Part shown: positions 762 through 63,973 of the stretch, in pieces
Position numbering within the stretch: the first letter of the stretch is position 1
How the letters are laid out: every line of letters starts with the position of its first letter
Assembly: GCA_965235115.1 (NCBI GenBank)
Contig: OZ249437.1
Span: forward strand, 5,456,001 to 5,520,000
Origin: Laetmonice hystrix
Taxonomy: Eukaryota
Direction of reading: 5' to 3'
Length of the DNA: 64,000 nucleotides
Translations under genes and position numbers: made by a program
Notes under the pieces: model-generated
Told to the model about the DNA's origin: nothing
The model's database searches: none
What the model saw: the letters and a program-made list of their open reading frames with translations, nothing else

Positions 762-6785
<6,024 letters not shown>

Positions 6786-22600: not shown

Positions 22601-25600
22601 CATGTATACCAGGGGTGGCATTTGGAGTCGACCGGTCGACCGAGGCGACAGAATTCGAGCTCGGGCGACTAGACATTCACAAAACACATGCCCGGTTGGC
22701 GAGTAGCATATTCTGGAGATAGGCCTGACTGGGATTAATTAATTGCAAAACAGACCCGGGCATCAGACGTTTCCATCATGTGGGCTAATAATTTTTCATC
22801 CGGGCTAGTTGATTTTTTGCTTTACTAGCCCGGCTGTCTAGTTCCTAAAAACTTTAATTTCCACCCCTGTATACATACCGGGGCGATTCTAAATCACTTT
22901 ATGAATAAGCAGCTAAGAGCTTGCTTAAGCAAAGCTTAACTCAGCTTTAAAAATAACGTCAGATTTAAAAGCACTAGTCATCTGAATGGCTTTTTGAACT
23001 TTTTTTTGATACTTTTGATAGTTTCAGAAATAAAGTGGGGAACTATCTGTTGGGATCAAAATTATGACTTCCAAAACTTGTCCCCAAGTTCCTGCCACGT
23101 CTACCTTACCATGTGCGTTTTGTTGATGTCGCGTGATAGGCAGCTTTCTGGTGTATCAGCAATCCACTTGTTTTGTATTGTTGGTTCAGTTGGGCTGCCA
23201 TAACAGAATTCAGCACAAGTTTTGCCCATTTACAGATGAAAATTGTGTGAATCTCGCCAAGAGGGGCATGAGATATATTTATTTGGCTCAATAGCTGCCA
23301 GGGATGGCCACCTACACTTTGGAAGCATCTAGGTTATGTGTGGTGCTCTCTCAGATCCTGCAGGATGGAAACAGTGTTAAAGGTCAGGGCCGTAAATTGT
23401 ATTTAGGCAGCCGAGGCCGCTGCCTCGGCTAAATTTCCAACATTTTTAGCCATACAAAATTGAAAAGAATTCTGGGGGCGGCCCCCAATTGCCGGCCACA
23501 TGGAATGTGCATAATAAAATACTAAATGGCTGAAAAAAATCAATGTTTTTACCTCACAAGGGAGAACAGTTGTCGCAATGCATCTGGCAGTGTGCCAACT
23601 GAGCTAGGACACTGGCCTCAATTCGATTTTGGCAGGGCCAGAGAGGGGACCCGGCAGGGGCGGGGGGAGAGGGGGGTGTCAATGGCAAACCAAACAGATA
23701 AGTTGGGAAAACATTGTTTTCCCTCAGAAAAACCATGCTTTCCCTAGGGAAAATATTGTTTCCTGTGGGAAACCCAGGTTTCCATCGGGAAACCATGGTT
23801 CCCGAAGTCAAATTTCATGAATTCATTTAACCTAAAAATTTTACTTTTGATGTCTTTCAGATTTATGGGCGTCTGTGTTCATGAGGGCCAACTGCAGGCC
23901 CTGACAGAGGTGAGAGAATTTCATTTTCCACACTTTGACCACTGTTGTCTGTGTTCATGAGGGCCAACTGCAGGCCCTGACAGAGGTGAGAGAATTTCAT
24001 TTTCCACACTTTGACCACTGTTGTCTGTGTTCATGAGGGCCAACTGCAGGCCCTGACAGAGGTGAGAGAATTTCATTTTCCACACTTTGACCACTGTTGT
24101 CTGTGTTCATGAGGGCCAACTGCAGGCCCTGACAGAGGTGAGAGAATTTCATTTTCCACACATTGACCACTGTTGTCCGTGTTCATGAGGGCCAACTGCA
24201 GGCCCTGACAGAGGTGAGAGAATTTCATTTTCCACACTTTGACCACTGTTGTCTGTGTTCATGAGGGCCAACTGCAGGCCCTGACAGAGGTGAGAGAATT
24301 TCATTTTCCACACTTTGACCACTGTTGTCTGTGTTCATGAGGGCCAACTGCAGGCCCTGACAGAGGTGAGAGAATTTAATTTTCAATACATTGACCACTG
24401 CTTAGCATTGCGACGGCCATAGGGAATTGCGGTTGTCAACTTCAACTTGTGATTTCTGTGTAATTGTGCTGCTCTTAGTAATGGGCGTTCCCAGATATAT
24501 ATGTATCAACCTGTTTTACGTTTGAATAAAAAAAATTTACACATAAAAAGTCAAAATTCTTTTAAAAAGACTAGGCCAATAACCACCCAATATGAATGAT
24601 GGACGAAGTCTTAGTCAATTTTAAAGTTTCTTTTATGTATCATACTCTCAGATGGACTGTATCCCAAAGATACATAGAAAGCATAGTTACTATGCACTTA
24701 GATAATTAGTGCCTAGTGCCTACCCGGTTGGGGGCTGTGACTTAGATGGGGTCTTGTTACTAAAAACATTTAGTGTAGATGAAAAACGATAATGATGTTA
24801 AACCAGAGTCCCTCTGCTATTCCAGTATATAAATGGAGGATCCCTGGAACAGATGCTTGCATCAGATGTTTCTCTTCCATGGACAATTCGGATTAAGTTT
24901 GCTTGTGACATCTCTCGAGGGATTCGCTACCTTCACAGCAAAGGCATATTCCACAGAGACCTCACATCAAAGGTTTGTTCTAATGTTTAGCGTTTTTTTT
25001 AAATTTGCTAAATTATTTGGATTTGGTCCCTTGGTTTCCAAGTGTTTGTGGTATTTAAGTGTAAGTCAACTGAAATCATCTAGAGTTAAAACAACTAAAA
25101 GATAATTACAGCATGAGTGTGGTTTTGGACTGAAGCTCCAGAAGTTGTGTATGACGGAGAGCAGTATTTGGTGTAGTGGTTGTACAATGTGAAAAGATGC
25201 AGTGTTGCAAACAGTGGTGCATTATTTTTGTTTCAGAATGTTCTGATAAAGATAGAGGCTGAGAATGAGTACTCCGCAGTTGTTGGTGACTTTGGATTAG
25301 CAGTCAAGATTCCTGATCCATTGTAAGTACCGGTATATATATGAGCAAAATATAGGCATTAGTTAATTAGGCCTAACAAACAAATTTTGTTTGTTTCCGG
25401 TTTGTGGCCCCCCAAAAATAGGGTCGATAGGTGACAGATTTATGAGTATTTATGAGTATATCTTTTTATTTTCAAATGATACTTTTATTTATCATGTGTT
25501 GAACTTGATACATGTATATCATAACAGTGAAAGACCAGCTTGCATAATTTGTCTTCACAAAGTGGTAATATAGAATTTTAATGAACAGTGACAAAACAAC

Positions 25601-28516
25601 TCAGCTTCCCATCGCGGGATCACCTTACTGGATGGCACCTGAATGCCTAACAGGCAGCTGGTATAATGAGAGGGCTGATATTTTCTCATATGGCATCATA
25701 CTTTGTGAAATTATTGCACGGATCGAGGCTGATCCAGATATCCTACCCCGGACTGAGGTAAGTGTACACTCTATACTGTCACCAGGGCCAGGTTCCTGTA
25801 AATTCTGATGAGTTCTTTCACCCAGTAAAAGAGGCAGTGTAGCGCCCTAATGTACTCTGTAACAATATTGGGGTCTGCTACACTGAATAAGGCTGACAAG
25901 AAGTAATTAAATGCCAGTTTTGCAGTATTTAAAAAATTTAGTCAAGGATAACTGGAGAAAAGGTCAGCCTCTTGACTGGGCTTGTTTTTTAAAAGTAAAA
26001 ATCATTGTGGAGTTGTTAGCTTGTTAGATCTCAAAGACAGCCAGTATTTCTGTGAATCCTTTGAGTACAGGTACCGGGTATGTGATTCACAGTGCATTTT
26101 AAATTGTGGATAGATAGACACTAAATTCTCAAAATAAGGCAGACTTCCTTACCAATTTTTAAAGAAAGTATTTAATTGTTTTCCAGAAATTTGGCCTAGA
26201 TTATGTAGCCTTCAGCAAGCTGGTTGATGACTGTCCTCTAAATTTCCTCCACTTAGCATTTGGCTGTTGTCAGGTAAGTTTATAAAGTGAACATGGTAGG
26301 CATATTGTCTACATTAGTGCAAGGAGTAGATTAACACTGCTAATTTTACTTCTTTCAAGTGTGTTTCTGTGCATTCCATTGTAATAATGTCATGTACAAA
26401 GAGGTAAGACTCATCATTTCCAAGGCAGAGAACTTTGATGTCCCCTTTCAGCCATGTGTTTTTTTGTTGCATTACAACATTAAGCCGACTTTCTATTCGT
26501 GGGCTGGTATTTACTTGCCCCATGCCCAACGGCCAATTCACAGGGTGACCCATTTGACCTTTGGAATGGTTGTATATCATAGCCTACCCAAAATACATGG
26601 CCGCCAGCTTGGATGTAAACACATTTCAAGCAATAACTCGGACACAATGATATCCTTCAAACATTGTGCAGATAAGATAAGAGGCATCTCGGGGGGGGGG
26701 GGGCGCCTCGGTGGGTCAGTATCTGGCGTGTGACCACATGACCTCTCATGTCTGAGATCGAATCCCCTTCGTGTCGGACTTCGCAAATTGTATGAAAATA
26801 ATCTTCGTTTCTAGGATGTGACCTGTCGCATTCATGCATGTATTATTAGCACAAACAGTTCACTTCAGTTATGTTTAAAAGATTCTTCCCATTTTCAGAT
26901 AGATCCTAAAAAGAGACCAACGATGACAGAAATTGTGAACACATTGGAGGAAATAAAATCTCGTTCACAAATGGCCATTGTCCTTGCTGATATATCTAGC
27001 CTCAATCTACCAACAAGTGATGTCATCAATAAAAGTCTACTGGAAAAGATTCTGGGTAAGATATACTGTCAATTATAATTGGGGGAGGTAGATTTCTTTG
27101 TGCTTCTTGCTTGTAGGATTTACAGATGTTTTTGCAAAATGAAAGTTGAATATGCTGGCTAAAATAACCATGGATAACACCTTGACCTTCACCTTACTTA
27201 TGGACCTGATCCACTTGCGTTGCAATGACCTTATGGTTATGTGGATTCTGATTTTTAGCTCTACTGGCTGGAAGTACGTGGGGTACAGTTTGATTTACAC
27301 AGAACATCAAGGATGTCCTGATTAAAGATGATTAATATAACAAAAAAAATGCATTTTGATACAGCTTTCGTTATATTTCCATGTTATTTTTCTTAATCCA
27401 AAAGGTCACAGACGGAGTCGTTGGGATGAGGGTCTCCAGTTGGTTACTGTCAAGATGGCACCGATGAATGACAGCTTCGATGAGAGTTCAGCAAGATTGC
27501 AGGTTGAGAGGCATAAACCGACTGTAATCCCGGTCAATGCTCATGTGGTCGGTAAGGTGATGAGCCAGGATGATCTCTTCTACACACCACACAAGAGTAA
27601 TCCATTCACGAGTCGTTACAAGAGCTGTGCAAAAATACTGGGCAGGGACAGCTCGGCTATGGATTTACCTTTACCATTGCCATTTACTCCGCCATGCACG
27701 CCACTCAATCCAGTCCAAGGCCGTCCAGTTCGGACACAGTTACGACGATCCAAGTCGCTACCAGAAGCTCTGACTTCTGTTTTGGATAATTTGCAAGAAA
27801 GTCAGTTACCAAGAAGGGCTCCCAATACTTTGAATCAGCTAAACTCTATAGCGAAGCCAGAGAATGAAGCTATGCATGACAGTTTTGATGTGCGTAGTGA
27901 GTGTAGCATCAGCAGTGACAGTGCTGTTGAGATACATTCTCGGGATCTGATTGCAGTGTCAAGTCCATATTTACAGATAAAAAAAGGTAGTGGAGACCCA
28001 TCAGTGTGGGAAAGCCAGGGTCATTATAGTATGGATCCTATGTCCCCTTCTATGGAATCCCACTCAGCACTACATGGATGGTTGCCTCCGTTACGGACAC
28101 CAAATCGCCATTTGCAGTTTTCAGTGTCAGGACTGGAAGATGTGCCGGATGTAGTGCCCTGCTCATTTAGTTCATCTGAATCTTTCATGTCAGTGGACGA
28201 GTCGAGCCTCCTGTCACCCACTGGGTCCTTATCAAGTTACAGTGAGTCAGACTCGGTCGTTTGGCGTAGCCGGTTCAATTTTGAATCGTATGAATCGCGT
28301 TTGCGGTCAAGAGAACGTTTTCAGGAATTGGTACAAAGGTGGGAGGCCAAACAGGCAGCTGGGGGAGAAGGTCCTCCAGTTGAGCCCCCTGCAGAGCCGC
28401 GGCCATTGCAGGGTATTAAAGAACGGAATGACCCAAGTGAACTTCAGATGGAAAAACGCTTTAAGGAGCTTTGCCAAAAGTGGGAAGATAAAAACATTGA
28501 GACACCACCAACCTGA
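19606..28516 (+). CDS. TESK: TESK (testis-specific kinase, LIMK/TESK/Cdi family), ~745 aa; exons 19606-19914, 22332-22453, 23861-23909, 24826-24972, 25237-25322, 25589-25757, 26187-26273, 26899-27055, 27405-28516
   Basis: Spliced kinase domain [18 protein letters not shown]|[29 protein letters not shown]|[16 protein letters not shown]|[16 protein letters not shown]|[13 protein letters not shown]..|[37 protein letters not shown]|KFGLDY..|IDPKKRP matches TESK1/2. There is no LIM/PDZ domain, and the tail carries RSKSLP, like the TESK 14-3-3 site. Phases are consistent. Confidence 0.96.
20133..20333. mobile_element. Nested Harbinger-type MITE (201 bp)
   Basis: ~24-bp TIR ..CCGG(G)AACCCACTATGCGATTT with TAA TSD (20130-20132, 20334-20336). 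Confidence 0.85.
20470..21025. mobile_element. Nested Harbinger-type MITE with CAG TSD
   Basis: ~34-bp imperfect TIR GGCCCA(G/A)(T/G)TTGTAAAAACTTAA..CTTGCTTAA with CAG on both flanks. Confidence 0.8.
22610..22869. mobile_element. CAG-terminal MITE with 5-bp TSD TATAC
   Basis: TIR CAGGGGTGG / CCACCCCTG with TATAC immediately on both flanks. Confidence 0.65.
23871..24400 (+). repeat. 76-bp minisatellite x7 spanning the TESK exon 3 / intron 3 junction
   Basis: Unit GTCTGTGTTCATGAGGGCCAACTGCAGGCCCTGACAGAG|GTGAGAGAATTTCATTTTCCACACTTTGACCACTGTT starts at 23871, 23947, 24023, 24099, 24175, 24251 and 24327. Confidence 0.97.
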
Positions 28517-30060
28517 AACAGAAAGTTCCTACGACTAATGACGCAACTTCAGCACATGTGATAATTGCCACCAAAAACTTATGAGGCTAATAATTCACGT
28601 TGTCTAGGCAGCTTGGGATGCACGAGTGACATTCTCTGTTTGAACATGTATTAAAAATCTTGCCAATATCAGTGGTTGGAGAAAGGTAAAGTGGTACGAC
28701 GGGTGTCCCATAGTATCCGGCCCCACCCGGAAAGTAACTCCTGGTCCCTATAATAATATACATGTAGTTCTGTCCCATCTACACCAACCTTTTTAATGAT
28801 CAACTGACTATGTAATATCATTATTCTATCATATATAAGTTAATATATCGTGTTAGTTTATCTCAAGTACCCAACTCATTTTTTTTAAATGGAGAAAAAA
28901 GAATTCAGAGCAGGTATTGGGTATCTGCATATCAAAAACCTGCCACCAAAGCAATTCCAATAAGATATGTCACAGATATTACGTGTAGAAGCAGTCTGGC
29001 CCATCGGACTTCGATCCGTTTCTTCAACTCAAAATTCATCTGAGACGGGCGAACAAGTAAGTGATGCTGTGGTGGCCTTTAAGGGGTGTGTGACGTATCC
29101 TGGTTTGAGGAGATGGCAATGAAGCTTGAGAACCGGTGGGAGTAGTGCAGTCAAGGCGGGTTATGTAGAAAACCACGACTAGTTTCTATACCGATGTCTA
29201 CCATGGTGAGGCCGGAAACTTTCAGGACACCCCCCGTATTGCCTTGAGACAACTTGCTCCTTGTTGGTGGTCTGTGATAAGAAGATGGTTTGGGGATATG
29301 GTGCCCCAGAAGGACAATGGTGAATGTTCTGTATACTTAAGAATGCTAAACTCTCAATTGTTAAAAAAATTAACCACATGTAAACCGCAATATATACATA
29401 AGATGTACACGAAGAACCATACCGGGTAAGATTGTTAATAAATACTATACTCAGGATTGTGCTTTAATTCTTTGTATATCATCGAGGCAGGGGGGGGGGG
29501 TCCCGTTTCTTTTGTGTTTTGAGATAATCTCGTTTGACATATTGGCTGAATTTGAGACAGACACATATGCCCATATATGGCACAAACAGATTTGTCACTG
29601 ATACAGTTTCAACCTCCTGCGAGATATACACGCCCACAAACTTAACATATACATGTATGGTGCACAAATATGATATACTTAATGTATAGCTTGCAAATAA
29701 AGGCAATATAATGTCCTATTATAACTAAAATAAATATATACCAAATGGCAAAAAAAAACATTTATGGCCCACAAATATTTGTCGCTCAAATCACTCCCAT
29801 ATATACCTAGGGCTAGGCTACGGCCTACAAGACTGTGTGTTGGGGTTTTGCTCGTAAAAGTTGCCAGTGTATCGATGAGGTAAAGCAGGAGTCCAAGTCC
29901 GGGTAAGAAGTTTTAAGGTTTATTCCATCGGAGCCATATCTGGAGCCCCTCCTGTCCTCACCTGCCGCACCCCCGGCCCACCCCTACCGCTGTCACCCCC
30001 ATAGGTGGCCGCTAGGAGGCGCCAGTGCCGGAGGGTCGGCCGAGAACCTGGCCCGACCGC

Positions 30061-31580
30061 CTTCGCCGGTCACCGCCAGGAGGGGCGAGTCCGAGAAGTC
30101 ACCTGAGGACATGGACTGGCTACCTCCGCCGGTCACCGCCAGGAGGGGCGAGTCCGAGATGTCACCCGTGAGGACATGGACTGGCTACCTCCGCCGGTCA
30201 CCGCCAGGAGGGGCGAGTCCGAGAGTCACCTGAGGACATGGACTGGCTACCTCCGCCGGTCACCGCCAGGAGGGGCGAGTCCGAGAAGTCACCTGAGGAC
30301 ATGGACTGGCTACCTCCGCCGGTCACCGCCAGGAGAGGCGAGTCCGAGAAGTCACCTGAGGACATGGACTGGCTACCTCCGCCGGTCACCGCCAGGAGGG
30401 GCGAGTCCGAGATGTCACCCGTGAGGACATGGACTGGCTACCTCCGCCGGTCACCGCCAGGAGGGGCGAGTCCGAGATGTCACCCGTGAGGACATGGACT
30501 GGCTACCTCCGCCGGTCACCGCCAGGAGGGGCGAGTCCGAGATGTCACCCGTGAGGACATGGACTGGCTACCTCCGCCGGTCACCGCCAGGAGGAGCGAG
30601 TCCGAGAAGTCACCTGAGGACATGGACTGGCTACCTCCGCCGGTCACCGCCAGGAAGGGCGAGTCCGAGATGTCACCGCCATGAGGGGCGAGTCCGAGAA
30701 GTCACCTGAGGACATGGACTGGCTACCTCCGCCGGTCACCGCCAGGAAGGGCGAGTCCGAAATGTCACCCGAGGACATGGACTGGCTACCTCCGCCGGTC
30801 ACCGCCAGGAGGGGCGAGTCCGAGAAGTCACCTGAGGACATGGACTGGCTACCTCCGCCGGTCACCGCCAGGAGGAGCGAGTCCGAGAAGTCACCTGAGG
30901 ACATGGACTGGCTACCTCCGCCGGTCACCGCCAGGAGGGGCGAGTCCGAGAAGTCACCTGAGGACATGGACTGGCTACCTTCGCCGGTCACCGCCAGGAG
31001 GGGCGAGTCCGAGAAGTCACCAGAGGACATGGACTGGCTACCTCCGCCGGTCACCGCCAGGAGGGGCGAGTCCGAGAGTCACCTGAGGACATGGACTGGC
31101 TACCTCCGCCGGTTCCCGCCAGGAGGGGCGAGTCCGAGAAGTCACCTGAGGACATGGACTGGCTACCTCCGCCGGTCATCGCCAGGAGGAGCGATATCGA
31201 GTCCGAGAAGTCACCTGAGGACATGGACTGGCTACCTCCGCCGGTCACCGCCAGGAGGGGCGAGTCCGAGAAGTCACACGGTCTGAGGACATGGACTGGC
31301 TACCTCCACCGGTCACCGCCAGGAGGGGCGAGTCCGAGAAGTCACCTGAGGACATGGACTGGCTACCTCCGCCGGTCACCGCCAGGAGGAGCGAGTCCGA
31401 GAAGTCACCAGAGGACATGGACTGGCTACCTCCGCCTGTCACCGCCAGGAGGGGCGAGTCCGAGAGTCACCTGAGGACATGGACTGGCTATCTCCGCCGG
31501 TCACCGCCAGGAGGAGCGAGTCCGAGATGTCACCTGAGGACATGGACTGGCTACCTCCACCGGTCACCGCCAGGAGGGGC
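30061..31580. repeat. GC-rich 63-bp minisatellite, ~24 copies (61/63/65-bp variants)
   Basis: Unit GCCGGTCACCGCCAGGAGGGGCGAGTCCGAGAAGTCACCTGAGGACATGGACTGGCTACCTCC. Indel variants shift the MDWLPPPVTARRGESEKSPED reading frame. Confidence 0.97.
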
Positions 31581-31679
31581 AAGTGTAGGGAGTCAGCCGA
31601 GGTCATGGAGGGGGTGCAGAACAGTCGAAGCAGGTTAATTTACGCAGCCGCCACCAGATGTCGGGGCATTATGATCAGC

Positions 31680-31739
31680 TCACTCGCTAGGTGACTCTGT
31701 GGTCGACGAGAGTCGACCACAGAGCCACCTAGCGAGTGA
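31680..31739. repeat. Near-perfect 28-bp inverted repeat (hairpin) with 4-nt loop
   Basis: TCACTCGCTAGGTGACTCTGTGGTCGAC-GAGA-GTCGACCACAGAGCCACCTAGCGAGTGA, with one mismatch. A single arm recurs at 50048-50075. Confidence 0.9.
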
Positions 31740-32989
31740 ACCGGGAACCAACATACTGCGCAAATCGGACGCCATTTGCTGTTGTCGTCCCACACTGCCG
31801 CCAGATGGCTGCTCTTAAACCGGATCACCGCTTACCGATAGAGGGCGCCCGCTACCCGGACTTCTTCCTTGCCACCTTCAGACAGTCTCATGTTCGAGTC
31901 CTTTCGGTAATCTTCGGAAATCTTCGGGTCGTTCGGAGAAAGGACTCTCACGGATTACATAATCACTCCCTGCCCAAATAGGAACATGCTCGTTATATTA
32001 TCAGTGATATAAAGTAGGCCTAGCAGGGGCGGATCCAGGATTTTCGCTTGGGGGGGGGGGGGGGGGGGGGCACCGGGACGAAGTCGGAAAGGGGTGGCTG
32101 GTCCTGAACTGCTGATGTTAGGCCTATACAAATTTCAATCTTCATAAATCGCCAGGTTTACTGTTATAGACCTTACTTTACTGCTCGAAAGGGGTGGTGG
32201 GTTCATTTGGGCCTATAAGTTATACTATACTTGTCCAAAATTGTCCCCTGTCCCCGGATCCGCCTCTGCTTATATAGGCCTACACCTACAATTCTTACTC
32301 TTGCATCATGACTGAGTCCACCACCGGATAGGGCCTACACCTTCGAGCCCACTCACAAAGGGTGGTCGTGCAAATCTCTCTGCCAGTTCTCTCAAATTTC
32401 CTTGATCAGTCTATAGCAGTGGAGGATCCAGGATTTTGATATGGGGGTAAAAGTTAACGGGTACAGGGTAGGCCTATACCCGTACATGTATAGGAACATT
32501 TTTTGCCACGGCCCTGGTGGCCATCATGACTGATCATTGGTATGACATAGACCTAAGGATCTAAAGTTTCTACCGCCTTGCATTCCCGCCATTTTCCACA
32601 TGTAGGCCTAGGGCCTATATGGCAGCTCTGTAAAGCATCAGAATCCAGCGTATTTATAATCATGTATATATAAAGTTTGTTGTAGATCTATGTCCTAATT
32701 ATATTGAATATTGTGTAGAATGATCCTAATTGTTCAGTGAGAAAAGTTCTTTGGTGAAGATGGTATAAAAGATAACACAAATGTCGCGGCACAAGGCCGA
32801 TGTCCACCACGCGGGTCAATTTTCCTCAATAGCGCTCCCCAGTGATCCACAACTGGGCCATTAAAGGCTTTGCTGTGTCCAGCCGTTTTTGAAGGATTTG
32901 CCGCGGAAGTGTTGTCAAATGAAAAGTTTTCTTGCAGTTGCTGGAAATCAGTTTCATATTTTTTTTAAATTTGATCCACTCACTGCATG

Positions 32990-33083
32990 TGCCCCGGGGA
33001 ATGATCCACCTTGCCCCGGGAATGATCCACTGTGCCCCGGGGAATGATCCACTCTGCCCCGGGGAATGATCCACTCTGCCCCA
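32990..33083. repeat. ~22-bp tandem repeat x4-5 inside a dispersed repeat
   Basis: TGCCCCGGGGAATGATCCACT(C/G) units; the flanks resemble 53860-54250 and 54820-54870. Confidence 0.8.
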
Positions 33084-35379: not shown

Positions 35380-35575
35380 GCCATCTCAAATATAGACGCA
35401 GAGTTCTCTGGGTTTGAACCCCCTTCGAGTCAGATGTGAGGTTTGCCAGTTACCTGCTGTAAGGTCGGTGATCCCCGGGATATTCCGGATTTTTCTACCA
35501 GTAAAACTGACCTCCTTCATATACCCCTGGCATAAAACCCAAATTAAAAATGTCAAATAAATAACTTTGTCTCAA
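35380..35575 (+). mobile_element. tRNA-derived SINE remnant
   Basis: B-box-like GGTTTGAACCC at 35410, a core-like GCCAGTTACCTGC..AAGGTCGGTG..TCCGG..AAAACTGACC block and an A-rich tail. Family similarity is from memory, not from a search. Confidence 0.5.
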
Positions 35576-35727
35576 ACAACAGTGTAACTTTAAATCAACT
35601 ATAATTTATGGTTGTCCATCTAGCCAACCCCATCCTTACTCATACGAAGATCGAATTTTATGTCTATATATTTTGTAACTCTTATAGTTGCCCAATATTG
35701 CACACATCCTGCTTAGTACTATATTAT

Positions 35728-45319: not shown

Positions 45320-45467
45320 NNNNNNNNNNNNNNNNNNNNNNNNNNNNNNNNNNNNNNNNNNNNNNNNNNNNNNNNNNNNNNNNNNNNNNNNNNNNNNNNN
45401 NNNNNNNNNNNNNNNNNNNNNNNNNNNNNNNNNNNNNNNNNNNNNNNNNNNNNNNNNNNNNNNNNNN
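45320..45467. other. Assembly gap (148 N)
   Basis: Run of N. Confidence 1.
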
Positions 45468-53546: not shown

Positions 53547-54520
53547 ACCTCTAAATATCCCCCGCCTGACGGTTTTACCGTTTGTTTGCTTACGGTTTTA
53601 CCGTTTGTTTTCACAGTAATCACGGTAATATACCGACAGCCCAGCTTCCAGTATTTTTACCGTAAAAAAAACGGGATATTTTTTAGTGTTGAAATAAAAG
53701 GCAATCTGGGATCCGCCTTTATTGTTGATTGCATGAACAACGTCTGGTGGTCATCCTGACTGGAAATTGGTATTACATAAAGTTTCTTTCTTACCGCCAT
53801 GGATTCATGCCATTTTGAACATCTGGCAGCTCTGTTTGTAAAGCCCCAGAGTAGTATACATGTATATAAAGTTTATTATATGTCCTAATCCTTGTACATT
53901 TATATGAATATTGTGCAGAATCATACTAATTGTTGAGTATAGGAAGAGTTCTTTGGTGCATATAAAATAGAAAAAAAAAGAATGTCGACGAACCGAATAG
54001 CATAAGGTCGATGTCAACCGCGAGTCCATATTTCTCACTGGCCCTCCCCAGTGCTCCAATTAATAACTGGGTGATCAAAGACAAAGTATGTCCAGCCGTT
54101 TATGAAGAATCTGTGGTTGAAGTGTTATCAAATACAAAGTCGGGGCACAGTGGATCATTTCACTTTTTATTGATGATTCGCTGATGTTGAATGACTATTC
54201 TCTACGATGTTATGTACAACATCCACCTGTAACCAGTATAGAAATAAGGCACACAGTCTGTTAAAGGCAATCGATCACCCTACGGCCGCCGATTTTCGCG
54301 AAGCGCTGTCCCCAATCTCCTATGAATCTGCGTATTTCAAGCTTACCTGATCTTGAATCTATCCCACTGGACTGATAAAACATTCTGTCGTATCCATAAC
54401 ATTCTTGTTCTATAGGTCTATTGTTGATTATGAGCCATAATGAGGTAATACGTCCCATATTTATTCACCTCAATGGACTGAGAACCGAGAACGACCGCCA
54501 TGGCCGCGTTAGCATTGTTA

Positions 54521-54560
54521 GGGCGGTCGTTACTATAGCAACGGGATTGGGCGCATGCGT
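54521..54560. promoter_or_regulatory. Promoter-like cluster: GC box, RFX X-box, CCAAT, NRF1-like
   Basis: GGGCGG 54521, GTTACTATAGCAAC 54529-54542, ATTGG 54546 and GCGCATGCG 54551 within a CpG-rich patch. Confidence 0.55.
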
Positions 54561-55516
54561 TGCCTCGCACTGCTCCGCCAGCCCTCCCCCCCCCCCCCGC
54601 GGAATCCAAATAAGGGCATGATGTGATTCGCGTGCTCTCGTCTCTAGCCAAATGGGTCAACGCTTAATTCATTAAAAATATTGTCAATATGGACGCGCCA
54701 TGGTACCAGACTGCAAAAAAAACCCTTATAATAATTGTTTTTACTCAAGTTCTGATGAATTGACTGCGTTTATTTCAATTTTCGGATCGATTACCTTTTA
54801 ATAGTAGATATGTGGAAAAAGAAAATTCCTGATCCATTGTGCCCCGGCTTACCCATCATAGTATTTTCTCGTCAGGTCGCTGTGACATTGGTGCTTACGT
54901 TGTATTTATAGACGGTCTATATGAAACAACCGAGGTGGAGTTGGTCTTTTATTTTTCAAAAGATGACCAATGTTTTATGACTATTAATAGACTAATTCAC
55001 ATATTTGTTTTCCATTTAGATTCACGGTGATTGCTTGCCATATTTCCTATGACCAGCTATGATCTCTTAGATAGGGTTGGTGATATGCAGTCATGCGTGT
55101 CGTCGTGCGATCCCGTGTGTAAGCCAGGCTGCTGGGGTTCCCACTGGTTTGAGGGGAGGGAGGTGGACTTTAGTTTATGCATGCAGTCTGTTGTAAACAG
55201 TGACCTGTGCGTCCTACACGTGATGTGCGCATTACATAGTGCAGAATTAAGCATTTCTCCATGGAGGTGACATCTTCCAGGCTTCACATAAAGCAGTTCA
55301 TCGCACCGAGTATCAAGGTCACATCTGGTCCATAATTATACGTCGTGACCCACTTATTTTTATGAACTGATAGATATGATGGACAAATATTTTTTTTAAT
55401 TTTAAAGAGGGGTGTTTTATGAATACATATTTAGCAATCATCAAGGAACAGTTGATAACGGAGCGCCTGGCCTACAAGCTAGCAATGCATGACTTTATTC
55501 CAAGATCCCAGTCACG

Positions 55517-57164
55517 TTATTTGATCAAATAAGAATGTTTATACCTTTCTAACTGGAATGATCTCGATGCGGCTTCTTTGAAAGAATACAGTCTGTTTTG
55601 GGTATCGAAGTCATTTAACTGACACCGCGTTTCCTCGAAGAGATCCATGGCTTCGATCAATGTAAGTCGCAAGTGATCTTGTAAAATTCGTCCATTCCAT
55701 ACCAAGAGACGGTGCTGCATAATACACGTAAGGGGTTCACTGAACAGAAAAACTGTCATTACTGTTGTCAGTAACGTCCAAGGAGTCGCTTCATTGACTG
55801 CCAATGCCATGCTTCCGACAAGGACACTGAGCAAGACGGCAGTTTGTACGGAGAGATACGTCCATATGCAAACAAAGAGTGAAAGTGTACGACCCCGGGC
55901 TACAGTTCCGTCATCCCAGGCGGTCACCTCCACATTATGGCGTAGTTTTCTTTCTTGCCAATACAGACACATCGTTTCAATCGTCCGTATAAACACACAA
56001 TAGAATGCTGTAATGGTTTCCAATCCTGTTAGTAAGGTCATGTGCCTGACATCCTCAAGGGGCATGAAGGTTTTTAAACAAGCAAGCAGGAATGTTACGA
56101 AGAGTAAGATCCAGATTACCAGGGGGGAACTAAACCACCGCCATGCCAAGAGTGAGGACATTCCATCGATTACCCTGTAAGGAAAAAGTGGTGGAAGTAA
56201 GAAGAGAGAATTATTTGTGCCATAAAAAACTCTAATTTCATTTTTTAAACTGATTGGTTGTATTGCCGTTTTATGCGAATGCATAGTGTACGTATAGCAA
56301 GTATACATTTGTGTACTTAAAAATGAACTAAGATGTTTCAGAGATAACAGGTTCCTCACTGCTATTGTTACGCCCACAATGATATCCATATACATTTGTG
56401 CATTTACTTCCGTAAGACACGCCACACACATTTTTACACACCTAAAAAGTTCCAAAAACACAAAACACTGTCAACCTAGTCACAGAACTAATTTTACTTT
56501 TCTAGTATCCTAAATTCGATTCACAAAACTTGCCGCAAATGTCGGCGACGTTGCGATGGTAACCAGTTTAACATCCTGACACCCATTGACTTTATGCTTA
56601 GCGGTTATTGTCATCAAGGATACTCGGTTTTAGAATACAAAGGCTAATTCTTTAAATTTTATTTATTTTTGGAAAATTATTGAAAGAAATCCCGCATATT
56701 TCAGTCATTTAATGTTAGAAATCTCGGGCTGCGCCATCTTACAGCCGACAACAGTGTTTTCTTGGGAGAACTAGATGGCACAATTGGTCCTAGTACACAA
56801 AACTTCCAGGAAATCGTCTTTGCTGAATCCATTTTTTATGTTTTCCTCGAAATCCGCTAAGGGAGATATACGAGTACTCACTGCGCTTACCATACCTGTT
56901 ATTATATATAGTCTGTTCTATGTCCTCAGTGTATGCTTTCAGCCGGATCTTGGCTCCGGCATGCGATTCGACCATGGGTTCCTGGGGAAGAAAGCTGTCC
57001 AGACATGGCAGACAGGCGAGCATCCCACCAGCACATGGTCCGTCCAGCTGTCGCTCTCGGTCAATGTAGTGTCTTGTAGCATACTGGTACACCGACCCTC
57101 GGCCCAGGATGAGAGCCCCAATGCGAACCTTTTCTGGTTCCGGGTTCGGTGACATGTGTGCCAT
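55517..57164 (-). CDS. Uncharacterised ~308-aa protein with about four TM helices; exons 57164-56896 and 56174-55517
   Basis: A phase-2 donor AACAG|GTATGG (56896) joins the pyrimidine-rich acceptor TTTTTCCTTACAG (56174) in frame (NN-R-VIDGM), giving 927 nt. Hydrophobic stretches are SPLVIWILLFVTFLLACL, TITAFYCVFI, LSLFVCIWTYLSVQTAVLLSVLVGSMALAV and WTLLTTVMTVFLF. I do not recognise the family. Confidence 0.72.
56550..56563. promoter_or_regulatory. RFX X-box-like palindrome in the intron of the 4-TM gene
   Basis: GTTGCGATGGTAAC, one mismatch to GTTGCCATGGTAAC. Confidence 0.5.
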
Positions 57165-59110
57165 TCAATCGGGCTAGTGTTAGCGGCAGTTCCAAATATG
57201 CAAGTGAAAGAAAACAGACAAACTTAAACGAGACGAAATGCCCTTCGAACGTGTGCGTCCGTCCAGGTCCTTCCCGGAAAACATGCGACGCAGCCTTGAA
57301 CCCCCTCCACCCACACACCCCCACCCCAACACGTGGACCCCCTCCACCCACACACTCTCCTAAGCGTGCGTCGTCTTTTAGTTATAGTTGATGCGATACT
57401 TTTTCAATTGTATTTTACCACTTATGTGTAAGGATTATATTTTGGACAAATCACTTGCGGATGTGCAATGGCGTATTAGTTTTCGCCTGCTGGTGACGTG
57501 AGTTGGACTGTATGGAGGAGTTTGGTTGAAGGACAACCAAACTTCCGGCGGAGGAGTGACTGACTATCGCTCAGTGACATACTTATAGATAGGGGTATGC
57601 TGGTCATGTGCGGTCATGCGTGTACGCGAGCATTCCCTTTAGATGTGCAGGTGTGGCAGGAATGCAAGTTTGGCTGGATGCAACCCCGTTGGACGTCAGA
57701 TTCTCTTGTTATGCAGGTCCTAGGTATAGGCAGTATGGGTTAAGGTTAGGAAGATATATTGATATAGTATAATATTAATAACTTCAATCCTTCTAGAGGT
57801 ATCAGATTACCTGCATTTTGGGATTGCAGATCCATCGGAACCGCATTCCAAGGAGACTTGGAAATCTGCTTGTGTTGCACCAAACTGATGGAGCCGCCAC
57901 TGAGTGGCGAATGCCAGCATAGCGCCCAGATGGCAGGGAGACTTTTTTAAATTATAGATCTATTGGGTCTAGTTTATTAATTATGCATTTTCCTTTCATT
58001 CAGGGAGGGGGCGCACAAATATGATATTACAGACGCAGGCCTAAACACACAATGGTGACAACAATCTCAGCAATGACACGGTTAGCTACACCCTCAACAA
58101 ACATTATAATTATAGCCTTATCGGTGAAATTCTTACAAGTTATCAATAACCTTAGCGATGCTTTAACTGGGAAACCGCACGAATACTACGAGGTTCAATT
58201 TAATTTTAGGCTTATACACAACGAAAGAGCCCAACTTACCGCACAATTGAAACTGCCGCCATTCACTGAAAGAATGGACACTTTGTGATGAGCTCTATCA
58301 GTCTATGAATATGACAAACAATGAGCACATGCAAGTGAAGCTTCCATGACATCTGTCGCTAAAACTGACTCACCTCTCCCTGGTAGCGATGATCAGGTAT
58401 TTTATGCTCCGGCTGACCTGACTGTAGTATCTTCCTACCATCAGTTCACGGCGACGCTGTGACCTTGCCGTATTTCAGTTCGGACTCATCCTCAGACTGA
58501 TCACACACGATCTCAGCCCTTGGCATATCTGCAGCTCTGGAGGCCTCACATATATCTCCTCAGTGCATGTCGCGAGTTATAATTGAATGCGTCGATCTAA
58601 CTGAGACAGCACGACGCTCGCTCAGTAGGTCTTTATGACACGTACGACCAAAACGAGGCCACCGCCGACGCGGCTTTGTAAATCTTGCCGAGTGCCGCAG
58701 TCGCGCAGATGAAAATCAATATCAATCACTAGGAACACTGACTCATGCTTTTGCTCCTCGCCAAAAGCTCTGGAGGGGCACGGGGTAACTACTGCAGACC
58801 CCCTGCCTATACTTATACGCTCATATCTATAAAAAAAAGTGAAGCTGATGGGGAGTGAGGCCCCCACATGCAGGCACTCCTTTTCCCCCAGGGGCCGGTC
58901 TTGCTCTCGATACTTGCTCTCCGTTTATGAACAACGGAGTACCACAGAAGCGTGGGGCGACGCGCCCCTTTTAAAGTAACAATAGAGAGGGTTCGCCACA
59001 CGTTTAGCACCGTGTACGTCAGGCAAGGTCACGACCTGACCACCCGTAGGCCTACAGGTTCTGTCAGACAGAGTTGTTTTGCCAGGAGTCTCCCTGACGC
59101 TCTACGTATA

Positions 59111-59365
59111 CAGGCGCGGATCCAGGGGGCGTGGGGGCGCACGCCCCCCCTTCAAAAAATAGGTGAAAAAAAGCAGTTTACTTTATTTTTGGATAGAATA
59201 TTCACCAAATTGCAGGAAAATGCATCTAAAATTTCAAAGGTTTCTGGAGACAAACCCCTACACCCCTCTAGAGGGGCGCGCACGTGTGCGGTGCGTGCAC
59301 TGCTAGTTTACCATTCAAACCCCACGCCCCCCCCCCCCTTTTCCAAAATCCTGGATCCGCCCCTG
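59111..59365. mobile_element. CAGG(C/G)GCGGATCCAG MITE with 5-bp TSD GTATA
   Basis: TIR CAGGCGCGGATCCAGG / CCTGGATCCGCCCCTG with GTATA on both flanks. Confidence 0.8.
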
Positions 59366-60198
59366 GTATACAACATAGGTGCATTGGCAGGACAGAGCTG
59401 GTCAGCAGGCCAAATGTGCTCCGTTTAATTCCATTTATCACTTATATCCAACCATGGTTTATATATAACAAACACTTAACTCAACATGTATATTTTGATG
59501 GTAGCAAACTGACCGAAATTTGCACTCATCTGTAAACGTACCCGTACAGACCACATGCATGGGACGTGTGGAGGGGCGTTTACCAGTACATGGTAATGTG
59601 TACCAAAAATATTATATAAACATATAACATCAAACTGTAGAGTAACCTTAAACACGTACAGTGTACCATCAAAACAGACATACATGTCGAGTTCAAGTGT
59701 TTGTTATATATATAAACCATGATTTGAAATAAGGGGGCAGGGGCGCCACTGTGCACACCCGAGTTGTACGACATCACGAGTTGGTTAATGTGCGCTGACG
59801 AGTCGCGGTATGTGTGCCCCCTCAAGCTTGTGTCCGATATTTTTTAATTTTAAGGTGGGGGGGGGGGGTGTGCGAGGTTTATTTCATAGTAAGCTCAATA
59901 AAAGATTATGGAGTCGACCACCCAAACCTCTGCCCGGCATTATACTGCCTAGATTATTTTAATAGAGAATTTAAAAAATAATAATAAAAGATTAGGCCAT
60001 TGGCAACTATCCTTTCGTATTCTATGACGAGTTTGTTAACATTATAAAACCATGTACCATTCTACAGAAAATGATAGCTTACATCCTTTGGAGTTCAAAA
60101 AAACCCAAAAAAACAGACATTTGTGTACATTATAATTTTATTCAAACTATTCATAAGAAAAAAAATGGCTTGTATAGTTATTATCTTACTGCCAACAA

Positions 60199-63100
60199 CT
60201 ACCGTTTCCTGTTCTTTGCAATTTGACGTTTTTTCTTCCCCATCCGAGGTCTCTTTCCAGTAGCCTAAAAATAAAAAATTATATTTTATTAGCAACAAAA
60301 TAGGGTTTTTTATTTAAACATTGATGGGAAGTGGCTTTGGGCCCTATAGCTGAAGGCCAGCACCTTGGTATATAGGGGCTCAACCACTGGATAGGTAGGC
60401 AGAAACATGGCACAAACCTAAAACAAATATGCCTGACAATTTGGACATGCCAGTCAGGTCAAAGGGATAGTACCAAATTAGAGAGCCCTATAAGAGTTAG
60501 AGTCAGTGTGTCGCCGAGTCGTTTTATTTTACTCAAGTACTATATATTATTCAAATATAGTCATCTTCATCAAACAAAAAAAGGAAAAACTAAGGGGGGC
60601 AGGACCCCTGGGCCCCCTTGGATCCCCCAGTGAACCCCATTATAAAATGCAAAATTGTCCCCTGTGGTGACATAGCAGTAGTAGTTGGAAAATCAGCAGA
60701 AAATGGGCGAATCATTATAACTTAGATAAAAGGTACATTGATTGGACCATATAAAAGGTACATTGATTAGATCACATAAAAGGAACATTGATTGGATCAT
60801 ATAAAAGGTACATTGATTGGATCATATAAAAGGAACATTGATTGGATCATATATAAGGTACATTCATTGGATCAAGATTCGCCTTGGAGTTATTGACAAA
60901 GAATTATAGAGTCTCTTTCACACTCATGTAATGTTGGGTTATTTTTCGTTTACCTTTAACCCAACTGGTGTTTTTCCACCTTTCGAGCCATGCGTCTTTG
61001 CACTGAAGCCGGACATGTCACTGGCACTATTTGAAGTGTTGTATTTTGACCTTTTCTTCTGTCCACCAAATCCAAACTTCAAATTCCTTGACTGCCGCTT
61101 CTTGTTTGGTCTTCACAATATTATTTGAAAAAGTTTAAAGTATAACATTTTGAAACTAAAATTGATTTCAATACATTCATGTTGCTGTCGAGATTCTAGG
61201 TGAATTGCATTTGAGAACACTTCAAAGAAAAAAGTTTACTTCCAGATCTAATCCATTTAGAACATAACCTATCTAAATTTGTAATGTTTCTTTGAAGTCG
61301 TTAGGACCTGGTATATGACTCATTACTAACCCTATCAAAATAATGTGTGCTTCTTAATGATAAAGTTTTGTATTTTTGATGAAAACCAAGATCATTATGT
61401 AAGGAAGCTAGGAGAACTTACAGGAATGATTTGCCTGGTGCTTTTTCTTTCTGCTTTTTCTCCTTGTGGTCACCGTCTTCAAGGAAGTCAAGATTTGTCA
61501 GCTTTCCTGTGAAATCAGAAAGAGTAATGTTTTTAAAAACATCGATGTTGCTACAGATTGGAAGGGGGCAATGATTGGAGTGACTGAACAACTGATTTTA
61601 TGCTGTCCGGGCCACCTTCACGGGCCAATCACGGCAACAATAAGGTTAAAGTAGAGTACAAGGTTAAAATATCTGTTGCCTGGGCCAAATGTTTTTTTAT
61701 CCTTTCTGATCATGTTCAGCAACCCGGCCAGCAGACATGGCCGAACCTGTCCCCAATCACATATGTGGGGAAGGCCTGCCAAGCTGTTCATGATTTCACT
61801 GAGATTTCTGTATCAGGAGGTCCAACCCAGATGTAACGGAAAATGTCTTGAATGCAAAAAATGTCACACGCAGAGATTGAGACATTTTTCGTTCCATACA
61901 TATGAAAAATGCATAAAAATCTCTGGTCGCGAAAAGTATCACAATTTTGTACCATTTGGGCTCACCCAGTTCACGATTTGCTTTATTAAGAATAAAGAAC
62001 AAACATTTACCTTTCCTTGCTTTTTTCACTTGATCCAGCATTTCCTTTTTTTCCTTTCTTCGTTTCGACAGGACGTCTTTCTGTACCTACAAAAGTCAGA
62101 AATGAAGAGGTTTCTCAAAAATGTATCAATCTCATGCTTCTTAAACATACATTATTTCATATCACTGTTATTATCATTGTGTCAGACCCAATGCATCAAG
62201 CTGCCAACAATGTGTTACCGATTGGTTTGATGGGTGACTGACTCCAGCAGACTTGTGCCCCCCCTGTCGGATCTAAACAACATTAGATGGAGTGTGGAAG
62301 TGGTTCCTACCATTACATGGCACAGACCAGCCACCAGCACTTGACTTAATTAACCTATCATGGTCACTGAATGTAAAGGGAAATAGTGCAAAACGAAAGT
62401 GCCCCCTCTCCCATAATGCACTTTTAGATCTCAGTAGATTACATCGATCTCGTTGACCATAAATTTGGATGAAAAACAAGCCCGACACAGGACTGAGGTT
62501 CAACTGGCTTAACCTCGACATTGGTAGCAATGTTTAACATTTCCTTGATGTTATGTGAAAACTGAATGGTAGTTTCATTGATACCATCATGATTTGTTCG
62601 TTATTGCACTGAAACGAAATCCCAAGCACAACCAATGCGAAGCCTGCTGACCTACTTACGGTGCATGGATTTCACTTATTATTGAACTCATCCGAGATAT
62701 TGCCCATATGAACTATGTTCAAAGTTTTGCTGAAATCCATTAAGATTTGTTGCAGTTATCTTGTTGAAACCTAATTGTTATTGGATGGTAGGACAGATGG
62801 ACGACATGCCACCACATAAGCTCTACTGGCTTCCAAAAATGGCTTAACTCCCTACTTTTATCACTGAGAAGAACCACCAATAATGTAACTGCTTCAGCTC
62901 TTTCGAAGGAGACAAGACCAGGTATTTAATTTTCCACCCAGGTGAGGCAGTCAACTTACCTGTTACAAGACCAGGTACGTGTACATGTATTTAATTTTCC
63001 ACCCAGGTGAGGCAGTCAACTTACCTGTTACAAGACCAGGTACGTGTACATGTATTTAATTTTCCACCCAGGTGAGGCAGTCAACTTACCTGTTACAAGA

Positions 63101-63973
63101 CCAGGTACGTGTACATGTATTTAATTTTCCACCCAGGTGAGGCAGTCAACTTACCTGTTACAAGACCAGGTACGTGTACATGTATTTAATTTTCCACCCA
63201 GGTGAGGCAGTCAACTTACCTGTTACAAGACCAGGTACGTGTACATGTATTTAATTTTCCACCCAGGTGAGGCAGTCAACTTACCTGTTACAAGACCAGG
63301 TACGTGTATGTAATTTTCCACCCAGGTACGTGTATTTAATTTTCCACCCAGGTGAGACAGTCAACTTACCTGTTACAAGACCAGGTACGTGTACATGTAT
63401 TTAATTTTCCACCCAGGTGAGGCAGTCAACTTACCTGTTACAAGACCAGGTACGTGTATTTAATTTTCCACCCAGGTACGTGTATTTAATTTTCCACCCA
63501 GGTGAGGCAGTCAACTTACCTGTTTTCCATACTTCCTGAGTTCCCTCATTTGTTTTGCTTTCTCCGACCTTTCTATCGACAACTGCTTGGATAACAACTT
63601 TTCCCGGACCTGAAAGGAAAATAGGCATCTATCAGGTGCTAACATCCAATAAAGCTGCTGAGCGGCCATTTTGAATGATATATAAAATCTAATTTACATA
63701 CACAATCCTCAGACTGTCCCTGATCATTGTGTAAAGTTTCATAAAATCTGACCCATACACTTCTGAGAAATCACTGTCTATGGACAGACAGACGTCAAAT
63801 TTGAATGTCCCACCCCTGCGGGTTTTAGGCTAATAATCATGCAACATACTTTCTTCATGTGTTCATCAGACTTTGCCATTTCGGCAAAGTAATCATCTGA
63901 ACGTCTGGTTGGAATGCACAAAGCCTTGAGCCGTGGTATTGCATGAAGCAGTGCTTGCTGGGCCTGGCGGTAA
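60199..63973 (-). CDS. EBNA1BP2: EBNA1BP2/Ebp2 rRNA-processing protein, 3' part; exons 63973-63850, 63609-63520, 62086-62011, 61506-61422, 61110-60954, 60264-60199
   Basis: Spliced translation YRQAQQALL..IPT.R..DYFAEMAKSDEHMKK|VREKLL..ERSEKAKQMRELRKYGKQ|VQKDVLSKRRKEKKEML..|..LDFLE..|PNKKRQ.RN.KFGFGGQKKRSKYNT..|ATGKRPRMGKKKRQ..* matches Ebp2. All phases are consistent, and AATAAA lies at 60142-60137. Confidence 0.96.
60726..60874. repeat. 25-bp tandem repeat x6 in the last EBNA1BP2 intron
   Basis: ATAAAAGG(T/A)ACATTGATTGGATCAT units. Confidence 0.9.
62913..63524 (-). repeat. 65-bp minisatellite (two 85-bp variants) starting at an EBNA1BP2 exon/intron junction; 9 copies of the donor
   Basis: Minus-strand unit AACAG|GTAAGTTGACTGCCTCACCTGGGTGGAAAATTAAATACATGTACACGTACCTGGTCTTGT. 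Donor G positions are 63519 (true), 63434, 63369, 63284, 63219, 63154, 63089, 63024 and 62959. Confidence 0.97.

What the first reader, a model, noticed from the sequence alone, without database searches (positions are those of the whole stretch)
23871..63524. Recurrent splice-donor-anchored minisatellites as a possible genome-wide process
Seen: two unrelated arrays in two conserved genes share one design: the unit straddles a true donor, is 65-76 bp (about minimal-intron size), is highly homogeneous, extends into the intron, and regenerates both AG and GT. That is 2 of ~20 coding donors in the window. Inference: a mutational bias or selective filter favouring duplications that remain spliceable, i.e. 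a candidate intron/micro-exon factory and splice-tuning VNTR class in this lineage.
Basis: inference. Interest (0 to 1): 0.8.

Follow-up and report, generated by a model that had tools for sequence, protein, structure and literature searches.

The report
Minisatellites that repeat splice donors
Two introns in this animal genome begin with tandem copies of the exon end plus its splice donor; this is a real and recurrent feature of a very repeat-rich genome, but it is a known kind of structure (amphioxus "mirages", human F7), the one transcript I could check splices normally, and donors are at most weakly favoured.

Summary
Both arrays are real. Array 1 (23871-24400, 76 bp x7) repeats the last 39 nt of a TESK/LIMK-like kinase exon plus its donor. 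Array 2 (62922-63524, 65 bp x about 9, minus strand) repeats the last 5 nt of an EBP2 exon plus CAG|GTAAGT. Both units are unique to their locus. A transcript contig joins the EBP2 exon from its first donor to the next exon, so all of array 2 is removed as intron. The class recurs: of 12 other arrays with periodic CAGGTAAGT on three chromosomes, four start at Pfam-supported exon ends (ECH_1, FGGY_C, TSP_1, and a weaker Ras match that I read as RAB4-like). Two other first-stage notes describe the same thing elsewhere in this genome. A donor-specific process is not supported. Consensus donor 9-mers lie in 49-79-bp periodic runs at 2.2%, against 1.2-1.7% for three same-composition controls, and a dispersed 20-mer family inflates the donor figure. 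Tandem repeats cover 6.7% of the window and 12-58% of the other loci. Unit sizes of 30-90 bp are ordinary here, and the exonic share varies from 5 to 61 nt. The design is already described (amphioxus "mirages"; human F7, IFI6, CBS, LMNB2), including the intron-gain idea. These are new members of a known kind. The raw-read test could not be run for array 1.

The parts
23861..23909 (+). Exon 3 of a TESK/LIMK-like kinase gene (49 nt, ...[16 protein letters not shown]). Its last 39 nt (23871-23909) are the exonic part of the repeat unit.
   Evidence: Translation. Gapless alignment of exons 2-4 to LIMK2 4tpt_A, E 3e-23. Sequence read.
23871..24400 (+). Array 1: 76 bp x 7.0 at 98% identity. Each unit is 39 nt of exon end, then GAG|GTGAGA, then 37 nt of intron. 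The authentic donor GT is at 23910; pseudo-donors follow at 23986, 24062, 24138, 24214, 24290 and 24366. The last unit is the most diverged.
   Evidence: TRF, sequence, spacing, unique in the genome. Using a later donor would add 76n nt and run into a stop (...[20 protein letters not shown]).
23910..24825 (+). TESK-like intron 3 (916 nt). The array fills its first 491 nt.
   Evidence: Donor and acceptor (ttccag|TAT at 24826) read from the sequence. The exon 4 translation continues the kinase domain. No RNA check was possible.
24826..24972 (+). TESK-like exon 4 (YINGGSLEQ...HRDLTSK).
63520..63609 (-). EBP2 (EBNA1BP2-like) exon, VREKLLSKQLSIERSEKAKQMRELRKYGKQ, ending ...AAAACAG|GTAAGT.
   Evidence: Translation. 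Transcript contig pieces and joints. Pfam Ebp2 on a downstream exon of the same contig.
62922..63524 (-). Array 2: 65-bp units (two are 85 bp, with a 26-bp sub-duplication), 9 copies of CAG|GTAAGT. Each unit is 5 exonic nt (AACAG) plus about 60 intronic nt. The authentic donor has its first intron base at 63519; the pseudo-donors are at 63434, 63369, 63284, 63219, 63154, 63089, 63024 and 62959.
   Evidence: TRF, sequence, spacing, unique in the genome. Partial depth support from DNA contigs in one bin.
62087..63519 (-). EBP2 intron (1433 nt), removed as one piece in the dominant transcript. The array is its first 598 nt.
   Evidence: Joint 62083->63517, skips 1433, CT..AC with cut +3, in a 730-nt contig of depth 286 from run X4.
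62011..62086 (-). Next EBP2 exon (VQKDVLSKRRKEKKEMLDQVKKARKG).
   Evidence: ORF. Transcript contig.
45320..45467 (.). Assembly gap. It lies inside the finding's span but outside both arrays and both genes.
   Evidence: The flanking ORF has no Pfam hit.

Best explanation
These are ordinary locus-specific minisatellites of a very minisatellite-rich animal genome that happen to have arisen across an exon-intron boundary. They are the structure called 'mirage' in amphioxus and known from human F7, IFI6, CBS and LMNB2.

The likely history is as follows. A tandem duplication of 30-90 bp with one breakpoint in the exon end and the other in the intron was amplified and homogenised by slippage or unequal exchange. 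That step is inferred from the 98-100% unit identity and the more diverged edge copy. The duplication is tolerated because the spliceosome uses the most upstream donor, so every further unit, including its exon fragment and donor, is intronic. This is shown for EBP2 and inferred for the TESK-like gene. Use of a later donor would frameshift into an immediate stop (shown from the sequence), so such transcripts would be unproductive.

Two such donors fall in one window because arrays are very dense in this genome. No donor-seeking mechanism is needed.
For: - Structure and true donors.
- Units unique to their locus and containing host exon sequence, so they are not derived from a transposable element.
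- The dominant EBP2 transcript contig splices from the first donor across the whole array.
- Reading through either first donor meets a stop at once.
- Density of arrays: 6.7% of the window and 12-58% of 12 other loci are tandem repeat, with unselected periods of 10-258 bp (median about 44) and 82-100% identity.
- Whole-genome counts. Runs (pairs minus triples) per site are 2.18% for MAGGTRAGT, against 1.70%, 1.60% and 1.23% for three same-composition controls. For CAGGTAAGT the figures are 2.84% against 2.31%. About 46% of the CAGGTAAGT runs on C1 belong to a dispersed 20-mer family.
- Anchored and unanchored arrays coexist. Of 13 arrays, 5 start at a Pfam- or RNA-supported exon end (one of them, Ras, below Pfam's cut-off), 1 is possible, 5 show no exon and 2 are unclear. 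Exonic shares are 5, 11, 13, 21, 36, 39 and about 61 nt.
- Precedent. In F7 the first 37-bp unit is 4 nt of exon plus 33 nt of intron, and only the most upstream site is used (PMC1557585). Amphioxus mirages do not disturb splicing (PMC3087553, PMC3902484).
Against: - The donor 9-mer class is still 1.3-1.8 times above every control, so a modest real excess at donors (perhaps about 2-fold, if a third to a half of such 9-mers are true donors) is not excluded.
- Two donors out of about 20 in one window is unlikely under my rough rate of about 1% per donor: P of 2 or more is about 1-6%.
- The two arrays share a rare 14-mer. The empirical chance is 0.2%, and the random-origin picture does not explain it.
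- RNA evidence is one assembled contig from one run. Contigs drop rare isoforms, and array 1 has no RNA or read check at all.
Confidence: 0.75

Rival explanations
1. A lineage-specific mutational bias, for example one coupled to transcription or splicing, preferentially creates or expands duplications at 5' splice sites. That would make these arrays a factory for new introns and micro-exons.
For: Donor-consensus 9-mers exceed all three controls in periodic runs: 2.18% against 1.23-1.70%. Five or six of 13 periodic-CAGGTAAGT arrays sit on true exon ends. There are two in one window. Array 1 could in principle yield 12-nt in-frame exons (ctgcag|GCCCTGACAGAG|gtgaga) with 64-nt introns. The intron-gain model was proposed for amphioxus mirages (PMC3087553).
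Against: The excess is small and is inflated by a dispersed 20-mer family. True donors are themselves a large source of CAGGTAAGT words, so finding many anchored arrays among arrays chosen for that word is expected even if arrays arise at random. The exonic share and unit size show no fixed design. The only transcript seen is canonical. The shortest confirmed intron here is 240 nt, not 65-76.
Confidence: 0.12
2. The arrays are functional splicing devices, either copy-number-dependent tuning of splicing efficiency or stepwise (recursive) removal. Every unit of array 2 ends ...AACAG|GTAAGT, which resembles a recursive splice site.
For: The junction motif in array 2. Perfect-consensus pseudo-sites can compete in the F7 minigenes (PMC1557585). 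Human IFI6 and CBS do use proximal pseudo-sites.
Against: The CAG|GTAAGT junction follows automatically from duplicating an exon end plus its donor. The pyrimidine tract before it is weak (cctggtcttgtaacag). Recursive removal would leave the same mRNA and so cannot be seen in the contig. There is no conservation test, and no evidence that copy number matters.
Confidence: 0.05
3. The arrays, or their copy numbers, are assembly artefacts.
For: All DNA runs found come from the sample that was probably assembled. Contigs collapse the repeat. Array 1 was not checked.
Against: The array's unit is present as contigs in the read sets (for example a 95-nt contig at 62954-63048 in X2), and in one array bin two of three runs show about 7-8 times single-copy depth (the tool warns that such depth is not a copy number). 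Arrays of 530-600 bp are well within long-read length. The same architecture recurs at many loci.
Confidence: 0.03

Closest known systems
Amphioxus 'mirage' minisatellites (Adh3, troponin C, globins BflGb6 and BflGb9, PGBD5)
   Same: Tandem duplications of an exon-intron boundary, with units of 10-160 bp that are near-identical. They duplicate AG/GT signals but do not disturb normal splicing, and edge copies escape homogenisation. They have been proposed as a source of new introns and as possibly general in that lineage (PMC3087553, PMC3902484).
   Different: Here I cannot name the organism. Both arrays here are on the donor side, whereas mirages are reported at both 5' and 3' boundaries. Here there is also a first rough genome-wide count.
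Human F7 IVS7 37-bp VNTR, and IFI6 (6-16), CBS IVS13, LMNB2 and PDGF minisatellites
   Same: The first monomer spans the exon-intron boundary (in F7, 4 nt of exon plus 33 nt of intron, very like array 2 with 5 plus 60). There are 5-25 identical pseudo-donors, and the most upstream site is used (PMC1557585).
   Different: The human cases are isolated and polymorphic, with tested splicing. Here polymorphism and minor isoforms are untested, and the class seems far more frequent because the genome is much richer in minisatellites.
Intron gain by tandem duplication across an AGGT proto-splice site (the Rogers model; cases reported in fish, mammals and Drosophila)
   Same: Duplication of a segment carrying splice signals creates a spliceable interval (cited in PMC3087553; PMC2891723 was listed but I did not read it).
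   Different: No new intron has been created here. The duplicates lie inside an existing intron and the coding sequence is unchanged.

Membership tests
Exon-boundary ('mirage'-type) minisatellite | Head-to-tail repeat whose first unit spans a real exon-intron junction. | tested here: met
   The junctions are validated by homology and by a transcript contig.
Exon-boundary ('mirage'-type) minisatellite | The splice signal is reiterated identically in the following units. | tested here: met
   Seven copies of GAG|GTGAGA and nine of CAG|GTAAGT.
Exon-boundary ('mirage'-type) minisatellite | Normal splicing is preserved: the authentic site is used and the pseudo-sites are silent. | tested here: inconclusive
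   Met for EBP2 at the level of the dominant transcript contig. Minor isoforms cannot be seen in contigs. The TESK-like gene has no RNA data.
Exon-boundary ('mirage'-type) minisatellite | Length polymorphism or instability (VNTR behaviour). | not testable with these tools
   Only collapsed contigs from one sample were available.
Recursive splice site array | A 3' splice site joined to a regenerated 5' splice site, used stepwise. | tested here: inconclusive
   The AACAG|GTAAGT motif is present in each unit of array 2. Use was not tested, and the motif is an automatic by-product of the duplication.
Dispersed satellite or TE-borne minisatellite | The unit is found at many loci. | tested here: not met
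   Both units match only their own locus. By contrast, the 63-bp array at 30060-31584 has copies on at least 9 contigs.

The most novel reading that the evidence does not exclude
True donors in this lineage are hit by minisatellite formation about 2-fold or more above matched intronic background. The cause would be a transcription- or splicing-linked mutational process, perhaps with sequence cofactors such as the 14-mer shared by the two arrays. Some arrays would then go on to become new short introns or in-frame micro-exons.
Probability: 0.12. Interest if true: 0.6.

Novelty: new member of a known kind. Interest (0 to 1): 0.3.

Why it matters
If such arrays sit on roughly 1% of donors, this genome carries on the order of a thousand natural experiments in 5' splice-site choice, each with identical competing donors, as in F7. 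That is useful material for testing first-come-first-served donor selection and the tandem-duplication route to intron gain. They also matter for annotation: each array offers gene predictors many perfect false donors and false exon fragments. On present evidence, though, they are a by-product of a very high minisatellite load and not a new mechanism.

Tried and rejected
I did not look for another route and used whole-genome pattern counts instead.
- RNA runs: neither search listed a run on record as RNA. Run X4 turned out to hold transcript contigs. Reads were laid on EBP2, so array 1 has no read or RNA check.
- Relatives: the closest homologues of the TESK C-terminal exon are 60% and 50% identical and their DNA was not retrievable. 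The contigs that were retrievable (38% identity, L048 and L049) hold only the orthologues of exons 5-9, not the exon-3 donor.
- Naming the lineage: cluster names, assembly accessions, a literature search and the protein atlas gave nothing. I left it open.
- Estimating what share of CAGGTAAGT words are true donors from the reversed control failed. Same-composition 9-mer sets range from 18.6k to 24.4k sites, so the fold-excess at true donors can only be bounded.
- The shared 14-mer as a general minisatellite core: rejected. It has only 40 other sites in the genome, and it is absent from the roughly 65 other arrays I hold.
- A Pfam match for the L052 flank, which looks like a tau/MAP repeat: none found, so it is counted only as possible.
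Full report
**What is there**

The window is G000:C2:5456001-5520000 of a 627-Mb, 35-contig animal genome. TRF reports two long, very homogeneous arrays at the stated places. One is 23871-24400 (76 bp x 7.0, 98%). The other is 62922-63524 (65 bp, six perfect copies plus variant copies carrying a 26-bp sub-duplication). A third array, at 30060-31584 (63-65 bp x about 24), is a dispersed GC-rich satellite with relatives on at least 9 contigs, mostly C29. It has nothing to do with splice sites.

**Array 1**

- The + strand exon 23861-23909 reads (R)[16 protein letters not shown] and is followed by GTGAGA. The next exon starts at 24826 after ttccag and reads [25 protein letters not shown]....
- Exons 2-4 joined in this way align without a gap to the LIMK2 and LIMK1 kinase domains (4tpt_A, E 3e-23). 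The gene is therefore a TESK/LIMK-type kinase and the donor is real.
- The unit is the last 39 nt of the exon plus the first 37 nt of the intron, so the donor occurs seven times, 76 nt apart. The last unit is the most diverged.
- Reading on from the first donor meets a stop after 16 codons, and 76 is not a multiple of 3. Only the first donor can give a functional kinase.

**Array 2**

- The gene is on the minus strand. The exon 63520-63609 (VREKLLSKQLSIERSEKAKQMRELRKYGKQ) and its neighbours are EBP2 (Pfam Ebp2, 1.7e-11, on a downstream exon).
- The unit carries only 5 exonic nt (AACAG) plus about 60 intronic nt, giving nine CAG|GTAAGT sites.
- Read-through gives V-S-stop at once.

**Independence and origin**

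Each unit matches only its own locus in the genome and contains host exon sequence. The arrays are therefore local duplications and not transposon cargo.

**RNA and reads**

- No run on record as RNA was found, but run X4 behaves as a transcriptome.
- Its 730-nt contig (depth 286) joins EBP2 exons at 61110|61422, 61505|62010, 62083|63517 and 63607|63848. All are CT..AC on the + strand, which is GT..AG for the gene. The third joint skips 1433 nt, which is the whole intron including all of array 2.
- So the dominant mRNA uses the exon-proximal donor. Contigs cannot exclude rare isoforms.
- In the three DNA runs (same sample) the array is collapsed. In one bin over it (63396-63499) two runs show about 7-8 times single-copy depth, while the other covered array bins and the third run are near single copy, and the tool warns that contig depth is not a copy number. 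This is partial support for array 2 only.

**The gap**

N 45320-45467 lies in AT-rich DNA without recognisable coding sequence, 17-21 kb from either array. I could not test continuity across it, and the finding does not need it.

**Is it recurrent?**

Yes.

- A whole-genome search for three CAGGTAAGT words spaced 49-79 bp apart gave 377 matches. On C1-C3 these fall into 13 independent arrays, plus several loci of a dispersed 20-mer repeat, (CAGGTAAGTGGGGRATAGGA)n.
- I fetched the 12 arrays other than ours. In four, the first donor ends an open frame with Pfam support:
  - ECH_1, 1.5e-11 (L053)
  - FGGY_C, 2e-8 (L054)
  - TSP_1, 5e-15 (L059)
  - Ras, 1e-3 and 19.2 bits, below Pfam's cut-off of 21.6; the flank reads to me like RAB4 (L060)
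- One more flank looks like a tau/MAP repeat but has no Pfam hit (L052). Five show no exon and two are unclear.
- The exonic shares are 13, about 61, 11, 21 and 36 nt. The units are 55-68, 72/92, 30-33, 32 and 61-64 bp.
- Two other first-stage notes on this genome describe 'about 25 tandem donors' and 'about 100 tandem copies of an exon end plus splice donor'. These are leads that I did not check.

**Is it more than the background would give?**

Only weakly. The pattern tool returns whole-genome counts together with a reversed-pattern control. I took runs as pairs minus triples, and sites as singles minus pairs.

| Pattern | Singles | Pairs | Triples | Runs per site |
|---|---|---|---|---|
| MAGGTRAGT (donor consensus) | 24378 | 2104 | 1618 | 2.18% |
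| Its reverse | 22533 | 1295 | 933 | 1.70% |
| GATGMAGTR (same composition) | 18634 | 1003 | 721 | 1.60% |
| Reverse of GATGMAGTR | 24269 | 963 | 676 | 1.23% |

For CAGGTAAGT alone the rates are 2.84% against 2.31%.

The donor class is therefore 1.3-1.8 times above the controls. Several points limit what this means:

- On C1 about 46% of the CAGGTAAGT runs come from the 20-mer family.
- The controls themselves differ by 1.4-fold.
- Interrupted arrays are counted as several runs.
- By locus count on C1 and C2 there are 11 non-family donor arrays against 5 control arrays, which is not significant once the site numbers are allowed for.
- True donors are a major source of CAGGTAAGT words. Finding 5-6 of 13 such arrays on real exon ends is therefore roughly what random placement predicts. 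I could not fix the true-donor share (same-composition sets range from 18.6k to 24.4k sites), so the fold-excess at true donors is bounded only to about 1-2.5.

**Background density**

- Tandem repeats of period 10 or more cover 6.7% of the window and 12-58% of the 12 other loci, with 3-10 arrays per 8-9.5 kb.
- The unselected arrays have periods of 10-258 bp (median about 44) and 82-100% identity.
- The 65-76-bp size and the homogeneity are therefore ordinary for this genome. The shortest intron confirmed here is 240 nt, so the 'minimal intron' resemblance is not supported.
- Scaling the 5-6 anchored perfect-consensus arrays on about 150-174 Mb suggests that on the order of 1% of donors carry such an array. 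This is my rough inference. With about 20 donors in the window, the chance of 2 or more is about 1-6%. That is unremarkable for a scan that has read more than a hundred windows of this genome.

**What it is**

The structure, its harmlessness to splicing and even the intron-gain proposal are already published. The published cases are amphioxus 'mirages' in Adh3, troponin C, globins and PGBD5 (PMC3087553, PMC3902484), and human F7, IFI6, CBS, LMNB2 and PDGF, whose first monomer spans the exon-intron boundary. For F7, minigene experiments showed that only the most upstream site is used (PMC1557585). Array 2 (5 nt of exon plus 60 nt of intron) is almost a copy of the F7 layout (4 plus 33).

My best explanation (0.75) is that these are neutral boundary-spanning minisatellites, tolerated because the first donor wins.

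**Unexplained**

- Both arrays carry ATTT[C/A]ATTTTCCAC on the + strand, although their genes are on opposite strands.
- Random 76-nt and 65-nt pairs from this window share such a 14-mer, with at most one mismatch, in 0.2% of trials.
- The word has only 40 other sites in the genome, against 20 for the control. It is absent from the roughly 65 other arrays I hold.
- It is not a general core. It may be chance.

Noticed in passing
window 23918-24311 and 62924-63497 (+ strand): The two arrays share the 14-mer ATTT[C/A]ATTTTCCAC on the same genomic strand although their genes are on opposite strands. The empirical chance for two such segments is 0.2%. The word has only 40 other sites genome-wide (control 20) and is absent from about 65 other arrays.
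   Followed up: partly
window 30060-31584: A GC-rich (64%) satellite of 63-65 bp in about 24 copies. Related copies (73-93% identical) lie on at least 9 contigs, most of them on C29. It is open in several frames but is a dispersed repeat and is not donor-related.
   Followed up: partly
L018-L023 (G000:C1:250437-250783); also C1:43.97, 44.25 and 46.70 Mb, and C2:18.73 Mb: A dispersed 20-bp tandem family, (CAGGTAAGTGGGGRATAGGA)n, carries a perfect donor consensus in every unit. It accounts for about half of the periodic-donor runs on C1 and would mislead any motif-based census.
   Followed up: partly
L050-L061 (12 loci on C1-C3): Minisatellites cluster strongly: 3-10 independent arrays per 8-9.5 kb, covering 12-58% of the sequence, against 6.7% in the window.
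   Followed up: partly
G000:C2:333393-337627 (seen only in the match lists): A 64-79-bp satellite near the start of C2 contains runs of (TTAGG)3-5, the telomere motif I recall as typical of arthropods. This is a possible hint to the lineage.
   Followed up: no
window 62356-62771 and 63708-63811: Stretches of the EBP2 introns have very high contig depth in the DNA runs (up to about 900 times and about 41,000 times) and many loose ends. They are high-copy dispersed repeats next to the array.
   Followed up: no
window 61536-61696: Two contig alleles differ at 6 of 161 positions (3.7%), so local heterozygosity is very high.
   Followed up: no
L049:4586-5620 versus window 25590-26270: In the distant relative, the orthologue of TESK exon 6 is split by an intron, and its second half is continuous with exon 7. 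Intron positions in this gene therefore differ between the two species.
   Followed up: no
window 6513-6869 (-) and 16061-17717 (-): Other genes in the window: a SMAD MH1-domain exon (Pfam MH1, 3.7e-14) and a core-2/I-branching glycosyltransferase (Pfam Branch, 1.9e-26 and 5.8e-11).
   Followed up: partly
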